Source of the DNA: Mytilus edulis
Taxonomy: Eukaryota
Reading direction: 5' to 3'
NCBI RefSeq assembly: GCF_963676685.1
Contig: NC_092353.1
Coordinates: forward strand, 8,680,001-8,744,000
Length of the DNA stretch: 64,000 nucleotides
Shown here: positions 5,126 to 64,000 of the stretch, in pieces
How positions within the stretch are numbered: position 1 is the first letter of the stretch
Layout: each line of letters starts with the position of its first letter
Position numbers and translations under genes: made by a program
The notes under the pieces: model-generated
The model's input: only the letters and a program-made list of their open reading frames with translations
Database searches by the model: none
Told to the model about the DNA's origin: nothing

Positions 5126-6074
5126 TATATATAGACAAAGCACATAGCAAAAAATGTAGGACAAGCAACAAACAAGTTTAACAACAGCACACAGAAATAT
5201 CATAATATATTATGAGAGGATATACAAGTACCACAGGTATCTTAATAATAATAAAAACAAACAAATATTTAACAAAGAAGCACAAAATTGGATAAATGAA
5301 AATTATCCTTTTCATTCATTGCTTTCTTATTTTTGAATTTTATTTTTGTATGTTAAATCCACTAATAAACCATTGAAAGATTTTCAGTCCTAAGACCGAA
5401 TGGTTAAACTCACATGACTCAAACGTAGAATCCAGCGTTTGGCATCAGAATGTAAACGTCAAACGGGTAGAAATAATTTTGTCGTTTAAAGTATGAAAAC
5501 AATATAGTCTATAGTTCTATAGACATATCCTCTGCAGAAGTTACATTTCGTTGTTGCCGCTTTTCTATATGCTTATTGTGTGTTCTTCGTAAAAAAAAAG
5601 TAGAGTCACGTTATTATATATTATAGAAACACAAAAAGTCAAATAGGAAAGAATTAGCAAATATTGCAGACCAGAATGCAAAAATTATAATAGAACAATA
5701 ACACAATAGCGGAATGTTCAAGCACAGAGCCACGTCATATGTATCAAAAACGTCACACTGACAATGCAAATATGAAGGACAATGACGGGATGCATAAGTA
5801 CATGTCTTCTTATTTCGAACACTTATATAAATAAAACATCGATTTTTTTGTGTAAGCTGGTATTCATATTAGCATACATCAAAAAGTGTACAAACATCAT
5901 CCACAAAACTAGTTAATAAAATAGACCACTTCAACCAACAAAAAGTAAGGATGGAAACAATAACAGACGATTACAAAGACCATAAAAACACATGTTTTAA
6001 TTAATCTTCATTATTTAAGTTTGCCTTTGGTCCCTTTTACTTAACTAATGCAAATATGTGCAGTGCCTATCTGA

Positions 6075-6705
6075 GCGTCGGTTGAAAACAAAACTTTACG
6101 ACAAACGAGATGATTTCAGCTTTCCAATTGTGAACTTTCCATTTCTAAGTAGCAACATTCCGGCAGCACCTGCATACGGGGTATATATCTCCCAATTGAT
6201 ACGATATTCCCGTGCTTGCATTTCCTATCATGATTTTCTTGATAGAGGTTTGCTGCTCACAAGGAAGCTATTAAACCAAGAGTTCCAAATGGTGAAATTG
6301 AAATCATCCCATCGTAAATTTTACGGACGCCATCACGAGTTGGTTGACCGTTATGTAATAACCGTTTCACAAATGATATCGGATATGTTCCTTACGTCGT
6401 AACTACAATCCCCTTCCCTTTCATGAATGTGACCTACCAAATTAGACTATTTACCGGATTTGTAATCACATAAGCAACACGACGGGTGCCACATGTGGAG
6501 CAGGATCTGCTTACCCTTCCGGAGCACCTGAGATCACCCCTAGTTTTTGGTGGGGTTCGTGTTGTTTATTCTTTAGTTTTCGATGTTGTGTCAGGTGTAC
6601 TATTGTTTTTCTGTTTGTCGTTTTCATTTTTAGCCATGGCGTTGTCAGTTTGTTTTAGATTTACGAGTTTGACTGTCCCTTTGGTATCTTTCGTCCCTCT
6701 TTTAT
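6075..6705 (+). mobile_element. 5'-truncated Penelope-like (Naiad-type) element 3' end, second family
   Basis: KTKLYDKRDDFSFPIVNFPFLSSNIPAAPAYGVYISQLIRYSRAC...KFYGRHHELVDRY is the PLE RT thumb/C-terminal region. The ORF stops at 6402 with no downstream endonuclease; the 3' UTR is structured. Confidence 0.85.
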
Positions 6706-8021
6706 ATTGTTTACTACTTGATTGATATTTTGAGAGTCGTATAAATGTGTTATAAACATTTCTTCACTATTTTAAGTCGATTCTAACACCATGGAATGTT
6801 AAGGTCTTTATGGTGTAATCTAATACATTATGGAATCATACTCTATCACTGATGTAGTCATTTACTCTCATAATCATTGAAAAAACACCAAAAACATCAG
6901 TTTTTTTTCTACTCCTAGGCTCAAATCATTGCTTGATATGTATTATATCAAATAATATCATATGCATAGTACCAGTAACTAGGGGGGGTTAAAGCTGCAG
7001 ATAAAAATATAAATGATGGATAATTCATAAATGAAATGAGATCTAATTGTTTTGTGTTTATTTTGTGTTTGCATCTTTGCTAATACTTTTTTTACTTTCG
7101 GTACTTTCTGTCCTGCTGCTTCAAAATATTAATACTGTTATATTATGTTAATCGTAGTACTAATTTATTGTAGGGCATGTAGAAAAAATCCGTCAATTCG
7201 GAACAAACTAAAACCTATTTAGTTTTATGCATACTAGCCCGGGTTCATAATAAAAACCAATATGACAACAAATCAATTTTCTCACATACCAAAAGTGTCG
7301 ATAAGGAGAGAGTCACCTTGGGGAAACCCGGAACATTAAAGATAAACATGTCTTAAGTAAACAATAAGAAATTTATTACTCTAGACTTGGTTTTTCAACG
7401 CTATTGATTTTGTATGTGTCTACAGATAACTTAGATATACAAATATGATGGGTATTGTAAATTATCCTACTTGCATTTGTGTTACTGTATGTTAACAAAT
7501 GTATTGTACGCTTTACATCGAGTGCACCTATGTTGTAGGGTAATCGATAAAAAAAGGTTCGGAGGCCTGAAAGGAATAGTTTGATGCTCATACACTATCT
7601 TCATTCCTAAATAGTCATGATAACTTCTCAACGATCATATATGTATATTCATGTAACTTCGCAACGATCATATATGCATCAAAACACAAACATGTTTATT
7701 TCACATTAATGAATGAATTATTACAAATTTGATCACTTATGATGTTGAATTAGACATGTCTGCTATTATAAAACTAAATATTCACTCGTCACGTAATTTT
7801 GAGCTCAAGTAAAAGAAAACAGTGGTAAAATTTACCAAAAAAATCCAACTATATATCACATTGAATACTTGTTTGCAGCCATACACGTACATTTAAACAA
7901 AATGAAATATGTGTGCGCATTGATAGTTAACAAATGTACCAGGCCTACGAAACGTCCAACAGCAGTGGCATCTACCCAGTGGTGTAACTAGTTATCAAAG
8001 GTACCAGGCTTATAATTGTAC

Positions 8022-8065
8022 ATGCTAGACGCGCGTTTCGTCTACACAACACTCATCAGTGGCGC
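8022..8065 (-). ncRNA. minimal hammerhead ribozyme, core intact but stems degraded, within a ~7990-8170 repeat
   Basis: Minus strand GCGCCA-CTGATGA-GTGT-TGTGT-AGAC-GAAA-CGCGCG-TC-TAGCAT. Confidence 0.65.
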
Positions 8066-39900: not shown

Positions 39901-42900
39901 ATATTGTTTCCATTTTTGTCCCAGCTGTTCAGGGTTGGACCTCTGCGGCAGTATCTATTTACCCTCAGCGAAGAAGCTTTTTTTTATTTACAACCTAAAC
40001 AATCATGTGCTGAAGTAAAGTACAGAAAATTTAAACAGGAAGTCCATTCTCAAAACAACACCATAAGGTGATAATTACAGTGATACGTACCACAAGTTGT
40101 GTGTTCAGACATTATAAGAAGTGATAAAAGACTTTCTCAAAATCTTCCGGTAATTTAACCCTTTCTGGACCCATTGTTTCAGTGTTTTATTGATGATGAT
40201 TTCAGTAGATGATTGGATAAGTTAATAGATCATTATCAGCTCTCTGAATCACTCCAATGTGCTAACCATGCTAACAGGTGTTTGAAAAATTGACATCTTT
40301 ATAATTGTATGACATAGAGATCCAGATTGTGGAAGGCACTCAAAAGGGATTTTAATGAAAAAGAAATTGAAAATCATCTAGAGAAACTGATTCTCTCACA
40401 TATTATTGGATTTATCTAAAGGAGCCTCAGACTTTGAAATTAAATAATTTACTTTTTCTATTAGATACATCAAATAACCATCTGGTACAAATGTTAGAAT
40501 CTATATTTCTTGTGTATCAATATCATGCTGTACTCAGAACATGCAATCCTTCCTGCAATGATCATTGATTTAATCCTTGTGAATAATGAAATATATATCA
40601 TATTACCATTTGTTATCCATATTTTGTATTAAACATGATAAAGGTGTACAAAAACTACTAGCACTTGAAGTGGTCTATTGAAACAGCACAGAAATCTGTT
40701 GACTGTAAATCAATCTTATTTTTTCAGGTTATGGAAAATTCAAAGGACAAGTTTTGAATGATGATGATGTTGAATGTTTATATGAAGGCCTCAAAGAAAA
40801 CAATATACATAACTTTACTCATTTACTGACAGGTAAAGTCTTCTTAAAATTTGGGGAAGGCTGCAAATGTAAACTGATTCTATGAAAATGTGATTGACAC
40901 ACAGAATTGAGCCTGAGAAAGCCTTTGTTTGTAATGTGTTATTATCCTCATATTATACAGAGACGTTTTTAGACTTATAATGGTTTAATAAGCTTTTGAT
41001 AAACATTACGTCAGAACATGAAAATCCAGTAGGATATTCAAACCAGAAAGTAATCTGTAAGTTAAGGCAAAGACACAGAATTGCTATTACAACCATAGAA
41101 ATATCATATTCATAGTGTGTAGAGATAAGGCCAAATAAAAATATATGTGTGGTTCCAGTTACCTGACAGAGCGTAGTTTAAAATCCTGACCCTAGAACAC
41201 TTTTTTTTATTTCTGAATAATAGATTTTCAAACAATCAAATTTTGAGGATTGTGAACTAAAATAATTAAATTCATAGATTTCTGTCATCTGAATTTCCAT
41301 CAGAAGTATGTGTTATGGCTAAAATGCAAGAATTCATAACAAAATGCAACAAAATCAACTAGAAACGTAAATGACTGTCTTTATTTTGCAACCAAACACT
41401 TTAAAAATGGCCGACTTCCAGTTAGGGGTGTGCATAATACCAGAAACAATAAACAACTTTCGAGTTCCATGCATTTCAGACAAAACTCTGGTTTTAGTGA
41501 ACATCATTCGTGCGTTTAAGGGCCTCGTCACATCTGTTCCAATGTTGAGAGAGTGGTTGGAAAACAATAATTATACTATATTGCAATAATTATTCGGCAA
41601 ATTAAATTCTCATAATTGACAATCAGCACTGCTATCATTATAGGGAATTGTGATTAAGTACTTACAAAACGAACATTATTTCTAGCTTATCCTGCACAAT
41701 GACGATCACTAAGACGCTTGATGAATGTTGATAGTGCAGTGATACAGGCAATCCCCTCTATATGGTAAATTTAAATGACATCATAAAGATGCGCATAATT
41801 GACGAGTTTTTTCTGGTGAAGGATGAACTCGAAAGTGGTCTTTTTCGGTAAGCACACAATTTTTTTCTGGATTTTGACAATCCAAAATAACAAATTTAGA
41901 AAAAAAATAAAAAATTGCTGACCTTAGCTGACCCTATTTTTTTAAAAGTATGTAACTAGAATCACACATATATTTTAATTTGGCTTTAGATAAACAATAA
42001 ACATTGATGCATTATAATTCTAGTCTTTAGTTCATCTTGTATAATTCTGTTCATTTAAAAGTAAATTTAAAATTGAGAATGGAAATGGGGAATGTGCCAA
42101 AGAGACAACAACCCGACCATAGAAAAAAACACAACAGCAGAAGGTCACCAACAGGTCTTCAATGTAGCGAAAAATTCCCGCAACCTGAGGCGTCCTTCAA
42201 CTGGCCCCTAAACAAATATATACTAGTTCAGTGATAATGAACGCCATACTAATTTCCAAATTGTACACAAGAAACCTGAACAAAACCAGACTTGACAGGG
42301 TAAAGCAAAAAGTAAAATAACAAAAGTACTGAACTTTGGGGAAAGTTAAAAAATAAAGTCTCTAATCAAATGGCAAAATCAAAAGATCAAACACGTCAAA
42401 AGAATGGATAACAACAAATTAGAACACATTAGAATTATGAAACTAAGAATCTATTTTTTTTTTATTTAGGGTATATCGGATCCAAATCATTCTTACAGAA
42501 GGTAGGAGATATTATAAAAGATATGAAGAAAACTAATCCTACACTGACATATGGCAAGTAATTATATTGATAATATTCTATTCTGTAGTCCAATATCTCT
42601 TTATTTTTAAATCAATGGTGGAGGATAGATCTTTTAGAGAAATATTCTTTGTTTATCATATCTATCTTTATGCTGGTCATATTTCCTTATTAATTCACAT
42701 ATATCTCACCAAATAAATGACATGACAATGTAAGTATCATTAGCCTGTAATTAAGAAGGTATTCTAATTAGAAATCTTCATTTTGATATAAAAAGACACA
42801 ATTTTTTTTTCATATTTATAAAAACATGTGTGTGAGGTCACAATGAATAATGAAACTTGCATTTCTGTTGTAATTGGAAGAAAGCTGGGGGTCTGAAATG

Positions 42901-51088: not shown

Positions 51089-54000
51089 TCAAACTTCTCG
51101 CAGTTTACAGAGTTCAAAACTGTATTCTCGGTCCCTACAAAATAAAAAAAGATAATGTTAACACTGATGAATGAACTTAATTCCCTTAACATAAAAGTTG
51201 CATACGAAGCCATGATTTTGATTGGCCGAGGCATAGCAACGTTGTATTTTATTGAGTATTAAAGGATATATAAAAATGCGACATCTTTGATTGCACATGC
51301 CCTGCATGATAACATGAAACATTACATCGATAAGGTACACAATATGCTGGATTCAATTCGCAGTTTTAAGAAATTCAGAAGAAATGTAAGTAGAAGAATT
51401 GAAAGCTTCCCTTTGTAATTTAATAAGTTTGTATAATGTTCAGCGCTTTCTAAGTTGCTTTACTTGATAATTTAAGGTTTTTGTAACAAGTGTTATTTAA
51501 AATTATTTTTAAATGTTTTATGTTTGAAATTGAAAATAGTATTTCATTGAACAAAAACAATTTAAAAACCCCGTTCTGCCCCAGAATTATGGACTTTAAT
51601 ACACTAGCACTATAGTAAACTAAATAATGCTGTAACGACAATTGAAAGTTGAATCACAGTAATACTTTCCACCTTTCTCTCGGATGTCGGTTGTTCGTTA
51701 TAAAGAAGGGACATGGCAGATGCAGAAATACAAGACAGTGCGGATTGTCAAAGTAAGTGTTCACAGAACTCATACACATCCAACTTGTTTTGTTTTAAAC
51801 TATGAGTAATCAAATTGATATACATGACAAAATAACCAACTGGAGAGAACACCAGCATAACCAAAACAAATGTAATCAAATATGTTTTGATTTAAAAGAA
51901 TGATTAAAAGGATAGTTCCTACATGGTCTTGATTTATAAATGGTTTAATAGTAAAAGATGCTAGATATATGCCACGATTAAAACTTCTGATCTATATTTT
52001 GTTAATTTCAAACTAACTCATGTCTGTTATCATGGGTGCTGGTCACGCCTCTCATTACATAATTCAGTGGAACATCAACAGAGAAATAGGAATCCCAATT
52101 GGTATGCGATGTCTGGTAGCATTCTGTAACATCAAAACCTGCAACAATAGTAAATAGTTGTAAATAGATAATCATGGAAAACAAGAAAAACAAGAAAAAA
52201 TCGACGAATAAGTGAACAAAACATTGCACTAACACGACAAAAAAACCCTGGTTTAATGCAGATGTTTCACTAGTAATAACCATCGTGTTACTAATGAGAA
52301 TTATAATTATTTGACAAAAGAGTATTTTCCAATATTATATAAATGCCATTTTCTAGATTCAATCAATCGACATTGCAATCATTTGTTTCGGATCAGCATG
52401 TGTTCTCTACTCGTTATAATGGGTAGATAGGACATTGCATATAATACTTACATTTGTTCATTAACACTCCTGCGGTTCAGATATTTGATGAAGATTTTGT
52501 TTTATCTCCAAAGTAGTTTTGTATCCCTGTCTATGATACAAACAATACAATGACACAAACATAATATTTAAAAAATGTTTGTTGCAGATAATGAGCCTAT
52601 ATCTGCAGCCATTGAAAAGGACCATAAAATTGAGAATGGAAATGGAGAATGTGTTAAAGAGACAACAAACCGACCATAGAAAAAACAACGGCAGACGATC
52701 ACCAACAGGTCTTCAATGTAGCGAGAAATTCCCGCATCCCCCGGAGGCGTCCTTCAGCTGGCCCCTAAACAAATATATACTAGTTCAGTGATAATGAACG
52801 CCATACTAATTTCCAAATTGTACACAAGAAACTAAAATTAAAATAATACAAGACTAACAAAGGCCAGAGACTTCTGACTTGGGACAGGCGCAAAAATGCG
52901 GCGGGGTTAAACATGTTTATGAGATCTCAACCCTCCCCATATACCTCTAGCCAATGTAGAAAAGTAAACGCATAACAATACGCACATTAAAATTAGTTCA
53001 AGAGATGTCCGAGTTTGATGTCAGAAGATGTAACCAAAGAAAATAAACAAAATGACAATGATACATAAATAACAACAGACTACTAGCAGTTAACTGACAT
53101 GCCAGCTCCAGACTTCAATTAAACTGATTGAAATATTATGATTCCATCATATGAATATCAGGCACAATCCTTCCCGTTAGGGGTTTAGTATCATACCATC
53201 AAAAACAATATGAGAAGAACATAACCCGTGTCATGCCAACAACTGGTTTTTGAATAAATATGTTCAGTTCCGATGCAAGTGAATGAATCAATATTAACGC
53301 CAAAATATGCAATCTTTAATGACCTGACAACAGTATCGTAATTATATCCCTTCTTGAGAAGTCTATTTAAAGGTTTTGTTAGTTTCTGAGGTGAATACTG
53401 ACATTTTTGTGCTTTATAAAGAATATTTCCATAAAAAATTGGATGTGAAATACCTGAACGTATAAGAAGTTTGCATGTTGAGCTATATTTATGAATGATG
53501 TCCTTTACTTGTCTAAAGGAGAAACAACAAAAAGCAGTAAACCAACCACCTATTAAAATTGAATGGAAAACACTTACGATAGACAACAAACAACAACAAC
53601 TGACATACATCAGAATCAAAATTGGGACAAAATACAATGTGGCGGGGTTGACATTGTTTGCAAGAAAACTACTTGCTTGGTAGTAATCGATATATGTGTT
53701 CATTCTTACCGTCATGTTCACAGCAGTAGAAATCCCACCGTCTATCTTCACTTCCGTTATCATGGATACTTCTCATTCCATGTATATATCCATGGTATTT
53801 ACATTGAAAGGCAAAGAATTCATCAAACCCATTTACATAACCTGACAAAGGAATTGAAATATGATTAAGATTCATAATCGCCTAAAAGACATTTATTTTC
53901 TCGTGTCCGGTATGTGTTCACGCAAAATATTTTGTGGATACTGATCAACATTATATAAAATAGTATATTAGTATTGCTGAGATTTTTTTCTCCCGATGTT

Positions 54001-62252: not shown

Positions 62253-62861
62253 TTGATGCAATAGTTATCAATGATTAGCATGCAAAAACAATTCTGATTA
62301 TACAGTATGTACATTAGCTATTAGGAAATTATTGAAAGATAAATCTTCGACTATTAATTGGTTTAAACATTGTCCATTATTCCTACTTTGATATTTAGTC
62401 TGTAAATGACATATTTACATGTAGGTGTAAATTCTTCGTGAAAAGATCCCAATCGGTCAAGTCGATCTACTATTCTAATCAGACAATAATGTTAGATATG
62501 AATTGTAATGAAACCCCCTAATTCAAGTGAGTACTTTTTAAACTATACATAAAGTAGTGTCCAATTTTCTGTTGTTTTATCTCTAAAGGAGATATTAATG
62601 TACATCATTTTGCAGACCACAACGACTTAGGCAAATAATAAAAAATCTGAAATGGTGTTACATACTTTAAAGGTGAAAAGTATCAAATAAAGTTAGCATA
62701 AGTACATAGTTGTATGCTTTATTAAGTATTTTTCGTGTTGTTGAAAGTTTCCATTTTTGTTTACGTTACCTTCGTCTGATGATGTGTCATTACCCAATCT
62801 AAACATAGTGCTTAAGTTGAACAAAAACTTATAGGTATCATTTTAAGAAATACTCTTTATG

Positions 62862-63826
62862 TATTACTGAACAATTATTACACCAGGGTTTTCGATATCA
62901 CAAACTAGTCAAAACACTTACTAAATTTTATCATCGGTATAAGGACATCATTCGTAAATATAGCTCAACATGCAGATTTCTTATACGTTCAGGTATTTCA
63001 CATCCAATTTTTTATGGAAATATTCTTTATAAAGCACAAATGTGTCAGTATTCACCTCAAAAACTAACAAAACCTTTGAATAGACTTATTAAGAAGGGAT
63101 ATAGTTACGATACTGTTGTCCGGTCATTAAAGATTGCATATTTTGGCGTTAATATTGATTCACTTATAGGGTCTTTGCATCGGAACTAAACACATTTATT
63201 CTAAAACCAGTTGTTGTTATGACACGGGTTATGTTCTTCTCATATATGTTATGATGGTATGATACTAAACCCCTAACGGGAAGGATTGTGCCTGATGTTC
63301 ATATGATGAAATCATAATCTTTCAGTCAGTTTAATTGAAGTCTGGAGCTGGCATGTCAGTTAACTGCTAGTAGTCTGTTGTTATTTATGTATTATTGTCA
63401 TTTTGTTTATTTTCTTTGGTTACATCTTCTGACATCAGACTCGGACTTCTCTTGAACTGAAATTTAATGTGCGTATTGTTATGCGTTTACTTTTATACAT
63501 TGGCTAGAGATATAGGGGGAGGGTTGAGATTTCATAAACATGTTTAACCCCGCCGCATTTTTGCGCCTGTCCCAAGTCAGGAGCCTCTGGCCTTTGTTAG
63601 TCTTGTATTATTTTAATTTTAGTTTCTTGTGTACAATTTGGAAATTAGTATGGCGTTCATTATCACTGAACTAGTATATATTTGTTTAGGGGCCAGCTGA
63701 AGGACGCCTCCGGGTGCAGGAATTTCTCGCTACATTGAAGACCTGTTGGTGACCTTCTGCTGTTGTTTTTTTCTATGGTCGGGTTGTTGTCTCTTTGGCA
63801 CATTCCCCATTTCCATTCTCAATTTT
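62862..63826 (+). mobile_element. 5'-truncated Penelope-like (Naiad-type) retroelement 3' end with SECIS-bearing 3' UTR
   Basis: Open frame 62863-63189 (ITEQLLHQGFRYHKLVKTLTKFYHRYKDII...GISHPIFYG...LHRN*) aligns by eye with the PLE RT thumb region at 6058-6402 (LTRKLLNQEFQMVKLKSSHRKFYGRH). No GIY-YIG domain follows. The ~640-nt 3' UTR is nearly identical to the reverse complement of 52625-53500. Confidence 0.8.
63240..63306 (+). promoter_or_regulatory. type II SECIS-like RNA element
   Basis: Helix I TCATAT/ATATGA; core ATGAT...TGAT; helix II GGTATGATACT/AGGATTGTGCC (10 of 11 positions pair, including GU); unpaired AAA 11 nt after the core; apical mini-helix CCC-CTAAC-GGG; 50 nt downstream of the element ORF stop. 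Confidence 0.8.
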
Positions 63827-64000
63827 ATCTGTAACTATAAACTCTGAACAATAACTTTATATTTGTTTAATATAACTTTAAGGAGTAACTATTTACACCA
63901 ATGTTGTATGATAACGTTCGTTAATTACTTTTTTAAGGAAATTTGTTCTGGAGACAGGATGTTTATGTTAAAGTTATAATATCTAAATATAAAAGTAATA

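What the first reader, a model, noticed from the sequence alone, without database searches (positions are those of the whole stretch)
63240..63306. Canonical SECIS hairpin in the 3' UTR of a Penelope-like retroelement: a mobile selenocysteine-recoding cassette
Seen: 50 nt after the TAA of the element's RT-like ORF the sequence folds as a textbook type II SECIS. It has helix I TCATAT/ATATGA, an AUGAU/UGAU quartet, an 11-bp helix II, unpaired AAA and an apical CCC/GGG helix. A second copy sits at 53147-53213 (minus) with an identical upper stem. Known: SECIS elements direct UGA-to-Sec recoding, and some Naiad-type Penelope-like elements (endonuclease N-terminal, RT C-terminal) have been reported as selenoproteins, so the class is not wholly new. 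Inference: the full-length parent encodes a Sec-containing retrotransposon protein with in-frame UGA codons, tying its mobility to selenium supply. Because insertions are 5'-truncated, the SECIS rather than the ORF is what gets scattered through the genome. No in-frame UGA is visible in the 109 codons retained here.
Basis: partly seen in the sequence, partly recalled or inferred. Interest (0 to 1): 0.9.

Follow-up and report, generated by a model that had tools for sequence, protein, structure and literature searches.

The report
SECIS hairpin of a selenoprotein-coding retrotransposon
The hairpin is a real selenocysteine-insertion (SECIS) signal left in a dead, truncated copy of a "Naiad" retrotransposon whose full copies need four UGA-selenocysteine codons; this kind of element was described in 2021, so this adds a new host and family, not a new principle.

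Summary
Window 63241-63305 (+) has every sequence feature of a type II SECIS and hits Rfam SECIS_1 at 32.3 bits (cut-off 35; E 0.017 for the window).

It lies 50 nt after the TAA of a 973-bp, 5'-truncated insertion (62856-63828). The family is young and high-copy. A second copy sits at 52623-53508 (-), with AUGA mutated to UUGA. A tail-only fragment sits at 42068-42275 (-).

Longer copies in the same genome encode an N-terminal GIY-YIG endonuclease and a C-terminal reverse transcriptase, the Naiad Penelope-like architecture. Their ORF of about 1002 codons has exactly four in-frame TGA. Each aligns to an invariant Cys in relatives.

I fetched 80 related loci from marine metagenomes. A hairpin with the same AUGA/AAA/GA core sits just after the stop in 16 of 18 family clusters with TGA at conserved Cys sites. 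It is absent from all 8 clusters without one. Its stems covary strongly.

The genome holds about 7,000 SECIS cores against about 580 5' ends. It also has tRNA-Sec genes.

Craig et al. 2021 described such elements in clams and spiders, so this is a new member of a known kind. The window copy itself is an inert relic. This scan had already flagged the same family on other pieces of this genome.

The parts
62856..63828 (+). Copy A: 5'-truncated insertion (973 bp) of the Sec-type Naiad family. It holds the last 108 codons, the 3' UTR with the SECIS, and the family's 3' terminus.
   Evidence: blastn against a full-length unit gives 97.5% identity over unit positions 6018-6990. It aligns with copy B.
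62863..63189 (+). Remnant of the RT C-terminal reading frame (108 codons plus TAA at 63187-63189). No in-frame TGA is retained.
   Evidence: Translation. tblastn to related proteins gives 69% identity to P0002.
63241..63305 (+). Type II SECIS hairpin: helix I, AUGA 63251-63254, helix II 63256-63265/63283-63292, AAA 63267-63269, apical helix 63271-63273/63278-63280, UGAU 63293-63296.
   Evidence: Rfam SECIS_1 32.3 bits. Own model R1 70.5 bits. Coordinates checked.
52623..53508 (-). Copy B: older 5'-truncated insertion of the same family (93.9% identical to the unit).
53148..53212 (-). SECIS of copy B. The upper stem is identical, the quartet AUGA is mutated to UUGA, and the 5' internal loop is changed.
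   Evidence: Rfam 22.7 bits. R1 62.5 bits.
42068..42275 (-). Copy C: the last 208 bp of the family's 3' tail only. It is truncated downstream of the SECIS and has no SECIS.
   Evidence: blastn 96.6% to unit positions 6784-6989.

Best explanation
The hairpin is the SECIS element of a selenoprotein-encoding Naiad-type Penelope-like retrotransposon.

In a full-length transcript (unit about 4.0 kb) one ORF of about 1002 codons encodes a GIY-YIG endonuclease followed by a reverse transcriptase. Four UGA codons replace conserved cysteines:
- the second Cys of the C-x4-C-x2-C finger;
- the two Cys just before the GIY-YIG motif;
- the Cys eight residues after the DKA motif.

The SECIS lies about 50 nt after the UAA. 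By analogy with host selenoprotein mRNAs, it would recruit SBP2, EFSec and Sec-tRNA so that these UGAs are read as selenocysteine rather than stop.

Reverse transcription starts at the 3' end and often aborts. Most insertions are therefore 5'-truncated and keep the 3' UTR with the SECIS but not the coding part.

The window copy is such a truncated relic and does nothing at this locus.

Shown here: the anatomy, the TGA-for-Cys correspondence, conservation and covariation of the hairpin across families, the copy-number asymmetry, tRNA-Sec genes in the host, and the presence of element sequence in RNA libraries.

Inferred: actual Sec insertion, and any link to selenium supply.
For: (1) SECIS anatomy. 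Rfam SECIS_1 hits at 32.3 bits in the window and at 27-34 bits in 18 of 20 other copies in the genome.

(2) In-frame TGA.
- Six of six longer copies carry TGA at ADKAANNIIIV[TGA]RKFY.
- Seven of 30 5'-complete copies read 818 codons to the end of the fetched DNA with no TAA or TAG and exactly four TGA, at codons 55, 86, 97 and 522.
- About 20 of the 74 copies scored with a relative's protein have a 905-aa open frame containing a single TGA.

(3) In an alignment of 15 families, all five columns that hold a TGA in any family contain only U or C.

(4) Conservation across families.
- Model R1 finds 35 hairpins in 81 sources, all on the coding strand. In loci with an intact ORF the hairpin lies within about 140 nt after the stop.
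- On their alignment 90.4% of cells pair, against 38-50% when partners are slid. 17 of 18 pairs show changes on both sides, and 0 of 500 shuffles reach the observed score.
- The AUGA, AAA and GA cores stay fixed.
- A sister family passes Rfam's cut-off at 38.8 bits.

(5) Association with TGA. Loci were clustered at 85% identity.
- By a lenient count of any in-frame TGA, 16 of 20 clusters with TGA have the hairpin and 0 of 6 without do (Fisher p = 9e-4).
- Counting only TGA at conserved Cys sites gives 16 of 18 against 0 of 8 (p = 3e-5). That reclassification of two clusters is my own reading.

(6) The host has five tRNA-Sec genes at 77-80 bits, against a cut-off of 47.

(7) RNA-seq reads from three libraries cover the whole element. 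None of the 40 best-supported differences falls on a TGA codon or on the SECIS. One library shows a 3- to 5-fold sense bias over the part specific to full-length copies.

(8) The published Naiad selenoproteins have UGA at the same pre-GIY-YIG and DKA+8 cysteines and a SECIS after the stop (PMC8557442).
Against: - The window hairpin is below Rfam's gathering score (32.3 against 35), and nothing is reported at that threshold.
- Its folding energy is not exceptional (z = -1.36).
- No experiment shows Sec insertion.
- Read depth on both strands, rising 5' to 3' with copy number, fits passive read-through of dispersed copies as well as element-driven transcription.
- The Sec/SECIS association is not phylogenetically independent. 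All families with no in-frame TGA are the most distant ones (39-47% identity), so it may reflect one origin.
- Two Sec-type families (L073, L105) showed no hairpin in the 208-329 nt available.
- For two others (L077, L103) the hairpin was found only by eye.
- Pfam and PDB sequence searches do not recognise the protein.
Confidence: 0.85

Rival explanations
1. The hairpin is mainly a 3'-UTR recognition structure for the element's own reverse transcriptase (a handle for target-primed reverse transcription). Its resemblance to a SECIS (kink-turn) would be secondary or coincidental.
For: It lies in the 3' UTR, is kept in every family checked, and has conserved stems. Retroelement RTs of the non-LTR type often recognise 3' stem-loops (general knowledge, not tested here).
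Against: The invariant parts are exactly the SECIS core (AUGA, unpaired AAA, 3' GA) at SECIS spacing. The hairpin is absent from all related families that have no in-frame TGA. It lies 525 nt from the 3' terminus where priming would start. A dual role is not excluded.
Confidence: 0.05
2. The TGA codons are true stops or are leaky through ordinary read-through. On this view the family is non-autonomous or makes truncated products, and the SECIS-like hairpin is a fossil from an ancestor.
For: No protein evidence was obtained. Public gene calls for relatives split at the TGA: many hits are 430-490 aa pieces.
Against: The family has thousands of young copies at 93-98% identity. Frames are otherwise free of TAA and TAG over 818 or more codons. 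TGA sits only at invariant Cys columns. The Cys/Sec mosaic across families, with two to five Sec sites, implies repeated viable switches. The hairpin's stems covary, which indicates continuing selection.
Confidence: 0.07
3. The window copy has been exapted: its SECIS now serves a host transcript and turns a host UGA into Sec.
For: The sequence is identical to the family's commonest SECIS core, which has many exact matches in the genome. Craig et al. proposed this route for new selenoproteins (PMC8557442).
Against: The DNA upstream of the insertion (62400-62855) has stops in the element's frame and no open frame longer than 43 aa on either strand. The copy looks like any other neutral copy, at 97.5% identity to a full-length unit. 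No host gene with an in-frame TGA was found here.
Confidence: 0.02

Closest known systems
Naiad selenoprotein families Naiad_Mmer and Naiad_Scon (clams) and Naiad_Smim and Naiad_Sdum (spiders), Craig et al. 2021, Mol Biol Evol 38:5005 (PMC8557442)
   Same: - Architecture: N-terminal GIY-YIG with Zn-finger-like motifs, CxC linker, GxKF/Y, DKA, C-terminal RT.
- Pseudo-LTR/tandem arrangement and 5' truncation.
- Several in-frame UGA at conserved Cys, including the Cys before GIY-YIG and the Cys eight residues after DKA.
- A SECIS after the stop codon.
   Different: - The host genome is different. Earlier notes of this scan call it a Mytilus mussel; I did not verify this. The paper discusses mussel Naiads but reports Sec only in two clams and two spiders.
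- The SECIS here is type II with an apical helix; the paper reports type I.
- It lies 50 nt after the stop, against 1-21 nt in three of the four published families.
- The four Sec sites combine a spider-type site (second Cys of CX2-5CxxC) with the clam-type sites.
Eukaryotic SECIS elements of host selenoprotein mRNAs (Rfam RF00031 SECIS_1)
   Same: AUGA/GA quartet, helix II of about 10 bp, unpaired AAA, apical helix, and a 3'-UTR position downstream of in-frame UGA.
   Different: It is carried by a mobile element at about 7,000 copies per genome. It scores just below Rfam's cut-off.
Canonical Penelope-like elements (Penelope/Poseidon, Neptune, Nematis)
   Same: A telomerase-related RT with a DKG-type motif, a GIY-YIG endonuclease, pseudo-LTRs, and 5'-truncated copies.
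   Different: The domain order is permuted, with the endonuclease first. No hammerhead ribozyme lies inside the unit. It uses Sec codons.

Membership tests
Eukaryotic SECIS element | Non-Watson-Crick quartet: 5' (A/G)UGA opposite a 3' GA | tested here: met
   AUGA at 63251-63254 and UGAU at 63293-63296. They align to the model's AUGA and GA. They are invariant across 35 related hairpins apart from a few GUGA/UUGA variants.
Eukaryotic SECIS element | Helix II of about 9-12 bp between the quartet and an unpaired AA(A), with an apical loop or extra helix | tested here: met
   10-bp helix II with 9 standard pairs, AAA at 63267-63269, and a 3-bp apical helix. Across families helix II is 89% paired with all 10 pairs covarying, and the apical helix is 97% paired.
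Eukaryotic SECIS element | Covariance-model score at or above Rfam's gathering score (RF00031, 35 bits) | tested here: not met
   32.3 bits in the window and 27-34 bits in 18 other copies. A sister family reaches 38.8 bits. This is a curated cut-off, not a biological requirement.
Eukaryotic SECIS element | Lies in the 3' UTR of an mRNA with in-frame UGA at Cys-homologous sites | tested here: met
   It lies 50 nt after the TAA. The family ORF has four TGA at Cys columns. The window copy itself keeps none of them.
Eukaryotic SECIS element | Binds SBP2 and supports Sec insertion | not testable with these tools
   Needs a reporter, 75Se labelling or mass spectrometry.
Naiad clade of Penelope-like elements | N-terminal GIY-YIG endonuclease with a CX2-5CxxC finger and a CCHH-type finger | tested here: met
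   The motifs C-HAKK-U-LT-C, DIT-U-KTNSIIYLLT-U-NKPGCGIQYVGETGR and R..EH align with Cys-type relatives. The evidence is at motif level only; Pfam gave no hit.
Naiad clade of Penelope-like elements | CxC motif, GxKF/Y motif, and DKA in place of DKG | tested here: met
   TPTSCNCS, SKGPKYRPP and VPADKAANN are present in natural copies, as listed for Naiads in PMC8557442.
Naiad clade of Penelope-like elements | C-terminal reverse transcriptase related to telomerase RT | tested here: inconclusive
   The YLDD and GIPMGTNCAP motifs are present. There were 3,979 homologues at E<=1e-10. No Pfam or PDB sequence hit was found. The AlphaFold model is poor (pLDDT 60.5). The top Foldseek hits are telomerase RTs, but at E = 0.3.
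Naiad clade of Penelope-like elements | Pseudo-LTR/tandem arrangement and frequent 5' truncation | tested here: met
   A partial copy of the 3' end lies directly upstream of a full-length unit. RNA and DNA read joints link the 3' end to that stretch. Three truncated copies in the window share one 3' terminus. The 3':5' ratio is 12:1.
Naiad clade of Penelope-like elements | No canonical hammerhead ribozyme inside the unit | tested here: met
   The Rfam scan of 20 copies found Hammerhead_1 hits only outside the element's borders. The hammerhead hit in the window, at 8022-8065, is unrelated to these copies.
Naiad clade of Penelope-like elements | Insertion-in-fingers domain between RT3(A) and RT4(B) | not tested
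   No alignment with TERT or other PLE RTs was made.
Eukaryotic selenoprotein gene | The host has the Sec decoding machinery | tested here: met
   Five tRNA-Sec genes at 77-80 bits, against a cut-off of 47. SBP2 and EFSec were not searched for.

The most novel reading that the evidence does not exclude
With about 7,000 intact-looking SECIS cores spread by 5'-truncated insertions, at least one copy in this genome may have landed in sense in a host 3' UTR. There it could have enabled a Cys-to-Sec switch and created a lineage-specific host selenoprotein. Craig et al. proposed this route, but it has never been shown. My evidence neither supports nor excludes it genome-wide. For the window copy it is unlikely.
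Probability: 0.08. Interest if true: 0.8.

Novelty: new member of a known kind. Interest (0 to 1): 0.35.

Why it matters
Selenoprotein-encoding transposons are rare. In the library I searched, only one paper (2021) describes them, with four families.

This case shows a young family of thousands of copies in another bivalve genome. The metagenome relatives fetched here add three points:
- The trait looks much more widespread. There are at least 16 family clusters carrying both an in-frame TGA and the hairpin, with two to five Sec sites in a Cys/Sec mosaic.
- One of those sites, in the CxC motif, is not among the sites listed in the paper.
- The SECIS is under structural selection.

For annotation, gene callers split these ORFs at the UGA, and repeat libraries see mostly the 3' ends. 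It also gives a concrete pool of about 7,000 mobile SECIS copies in which to test whether transposons seed new host selenoproteins.

Tried and rejected
Full ORFs therefore had to be read in two halves from different copies.
I could not fetch the contigs of the close Cys-type relatives P0002, P0003 and P0005.

**Searches that found nothing or were inconclusive**
- Rfam at the gathering threshold found nothing.
- Pfam found no family for the EN-linker or RT pieces, even at E up to 10.
- A profile search of PDB sequences gave nothing relevant.
- The structure model was weak. Foldseek gave only non-significant telomerase RT hits.
- The paper's supplements are not held.
- Literature searches found no later report of Sec-coding PLEs.

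**Readings I rejected**
- An apparent -1 frameshift before the GIY-YIG motif in one full-length copy is a private 4-nt deletion. The other 29 copies are in frame.
- Two TGA seen in the wrong frame of that copy are not Sec codons.
- Conservation of TGA among copies in this genome is not evidence in itself, because the copies are 92-98% identical. I relied on open frames and on cross-family alignment instead.
- MAFFT misaligned helix I between families, so I realigned with a covariance model.

**Step not done**
See the referred steps.

Full report
**What is in the window**

The stretch 63241-63305 (+) reads as a SECIS hairpin. In order it has:
- helix I (CATAT/ATATG);
- a 5-nt internal loop;
- AUGA at 63251-63254;
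- a 10-bp helix II, GGUAUGAUAC/GGAUUGUGCC, with nine standard pairs, three of them G-U;
- unpaired AAA at 63267-63269;
- a 3-bp apical helix, CCC/GGG;
- the 3' UGAU at 63293-63296.

Rfam's SECIS_1 model aligns to it end to end at 32.3 bits. E is 6.9e-5 in a 251-nt search and 0.017 for the whole window. That is under the curated cut-off of 35, so the gathering-level scan is empty.

It has the same upper stem, but its quartet is UUGA and it scores 22.7 bits. These are the only two SECIS matches in 128 kb of both strands. The hairpin is not thermodynamically unusual (z = -1.36 and -1.90).

**What it belongs to**

The hairpin lies 50 nt after the TAA that ends a 108-codon frame.

blastn against a full-length unit from the same genome finds three 5'-truncated insertions in the window:
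- 62856-63828 (+), 97.5% identical;
- 52623-53508 (-), 93.9% identical;
- 42068-42275 (-), the tail only, with no SECIS.

All three end at the same 3' terminus, as expected from target-primed reverse transcription that aborts early.

The family is abundant in this 1.37-Gb genome.
- The 46-nt SECIS core occurs 7,317 times with up to 3 mismatches. The reversed control pattern occurs 0 times.
- At equal stringency (23-mers, up to 1 mismatch), the SECIS apex occurs 6,962 times and a marker in the endonuclease-coding 5' part 580 times.

So about 12 SECIS copies exist for each 5' end.

**The parent element**

One fetched locus holds a complete unit of about 4.0 kb. A partial copy of the unit's own 3' end lies directly upstream, which is the pseudo-LTR arrangement.

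That copy seemed to need a -1 frameshift just before the GIY-YIG motif. Alignment with 29 other copies showed that it carries a private 4-nt deletion. The family is in frame.

The frame was read from its ATG in the 5'-complete copies.
- Seven of 30 copies run 818 codons to the end of the fetched DNA without any TAA or TAG. They have exactly four TGA, at codons 55, 86, 97 and 522.
- Most of the other copies carry the same four TGA plus private defects.
- A protein search of the genome scored 74 copies. Nearly all have a single TGA in the matched region. About 20 have a 905-aa open frame, which is the distance from codon 98 to the natural stop.
- The C-terminal 434-480 codons are open in several 3' copies.

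The protein has the Naiad signature (features as listed in PMC8557442):
- C-HAKK-U-LT-C, a CX2-5CxxC finger;
- DIT-U-KTNSIIYLLT-U-NKPGCGIQYVGETGR, the GIY-YIG endonuclease;
- the CxC motif (SCNC);
- GPKY;
- DKA;
- the RT core motifs GIPMGTNCAP and YLDD.

Pfam and PDB sequence searches do not recognise it. A weak AlphaFold model (pLDDT 60.5) has telomerase RTs as its top Foldseek hits, but not significantly. RT membership therefore rests on motifs and on the published description.

**Do the TGA stand for selenocysteine?**

A scan of marine metagenome contigs with an alignment of relatives returned 80 loci at 39-99% identity.

At the position eight residues after DKA, about 35 loci have TGA and about 22 have TGT or TGC.

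I walked the frames in each locus and aligned 15 N-termini, with X standing for TGA. This shows five columns in which some family has TGA. Every one of these columns holds only U or C across all 15 families.

Families carry from two to five of these sites.
- The family in this window has four.
- Others also use the first Cys of the CxC motif. That site is not among those listed by Craig et al..
- Close relatives (77-82% identical proteins P0002, P0003, P0005) have Cys at DKA+8.
- Some loci with Cys at DKA+8 still have TGA at the CxC site.

Cys and Sec have therefore switched repeatedly.

**Is the hairpin a conserved SECIS?**

Rfam found SECIS_1 matches just after the ORF in 7 of 20 relatives tested. 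One of them is above the cut-off, at 38.8 bits.

I built a covariance model from seven of these hairpins. It found 35 matches in 308 kb, all on the coding strand. In loci with an intact ORF the match lies from directly at the stop to about 140 nt after it.

The AUGA, AAA and GA cores stay fixed while both stems change. On that alignment:
- 90.4% of cells form standard pairs, against 38-50% when the partners are slid by 1-3 columns;
- 17 of 18 pairs have changes on both sides;
- no shuffle out of 500 reaches the observed covariation score.

The alignment was fitted to the model, which favours pairing. The slid controls were made on the same alignment and are far lower.

Between the window family and its 82% relative alone, helix II changes at seven of ten pairs and remains fully paired.

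Two further Sec-type families have hairpins that I could recognise only by eye (L077, L103). Two showed none in the short flank available (L073, L105).

Loci were clustered at 85% identity.
- By a lenient count of any in-frame TGA, the hairpin is present in 16 of 20 clusters with TGA and in 0 of 6 without (Fisher p = 9e-4).
- Counting only TGA at the conserved Cys sites gives 16 of 18 against 0 of 8 (p = 3e-5). That reclassification is mine.

The clusters with no in-frame TGA are all the most distant ones. The association may therefore trace to a single origin and is not a set of independent events.

**Host and expression**

The genome has five tRNA-Sec genes at 77-80 bits, against a cut-off of 47.

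I laid reads from three transcriptome libraries, carrying the same species label as the best DNA holders, on a 99%-identical contig with the intact frame. They cover the whole element.
- Depth rises from about 5-50 in the 5' two-thirds to several hundred in the 3' tail. This mirrors copy number.
- Both strands are covered. Much of the signal may therefore be passive.
- One library shows a 3- to 5-fold excess of the orientation expected for sense RNA over the part specific to full-length copies.
- None of the 40 best-supported differences lies on a TGA codon or on the SECIS. A further 201 differences were not shown.
- Joints link the 3' end back to the upstream partial copy, which confirms the tandem structure.

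**Comparison with what is known**

Craig, Yushenova, Rodriguez and Arkhipova (2021, PMC8557442) described Naiads and reported four Sec-coding families, in two clams and two spiders.
- Each has three or four UGA at conserved Cys. In all four these include the Cys before GIY-YIG and the Cys eight residues after DKA.
- They report grade-A type I SECIS elements, 1-21 nt after the stop in three families.

The element here matches those defining features. It differs in these respects:
- the host;
- the SECIS type (type II);
- the distance from the stop (50 nt);
- the combination of Sec sites.

Literature searches found no later report of Sec-coding PLEs. Earlier notes of this scan had already flagged the same family on other pieces of this genome and call the host a Mytilus mussel. 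I did not verify the species.

**Limits**

- SECISearch3 is not among the tools.
- I built no consensus and named no copy as intact, under the scan's rule for such stretches in animal genomes.

**Verdict**

- The window copy is an inert relic of a selenoprotein-coding Naiad retrotransposon.
- It is a new member of a known kind.
- Sec insertion itself remains inferred.

Noticed in passing
L071, L077, L083, L094, L103, L108 (metagenome loci), 128 codons upstream of the DKA motif: A fifth conserved Sec site. In several related Naiad families, TGA replaces the first Cys of the Naiad-specific CxC motif (U-D-C or U-E-C). Craig et al. 2021 do not list this site. Families carry two to five Sec in a Cys/Sec mosaic.
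   Followed up: partly
L070, L075, L076, L112 (metagenome loci): These relatives have Cys at DKA+8 but still keep a well-paired SECIS. Where the contig reaches that far, they have a TGA at the CxC site. So Sec sites are lost and gained one at a time while the SECIS is kept.
   Followed up: partly
window 8022-8065 (-): Hammerhead ribozyme type I match at 29 bits (cut-off 34; E 0.005 for the window). It is not part of the Naiad copies. Similar sub-threshold hammerhead hits lie in the flanks of three other loci (L010, L015, L018).
   Followed up: no
window 6034-6387 (+): Fragment of a different Penelope-like/Naiad-like RT family, 47-60% identical to proteins P0036 and P0041. No SECIS match lies near it.
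   Followed up: no
window about 53720-53850 (-): A likely host exon directly upstream of copy B. It encodes ...GYIHGMRSIHDNGSEDRRWDFYCCEHDGK, which from memory resembles a dermatopontin-type repeat. Copy B would then lie in its intron or flank.
   Followed up: no
G000:C10:14401393-14442259 (-), same chromosome as the window: A tandem array of about 45 tRNA-like units spaced 895 bp apart. Each scores 45.9 bits against tRNA-Sec, just under the cut-off of 47. It is probably another long-arm tRNA, amplified in tandem.
   Followed up: no
runs X1, X3-X5: Fish-gut metatranscriptome assemblies hold over half of the element's sampled words. This presumably comes from ingested mussel tissue.
   Followed up: no
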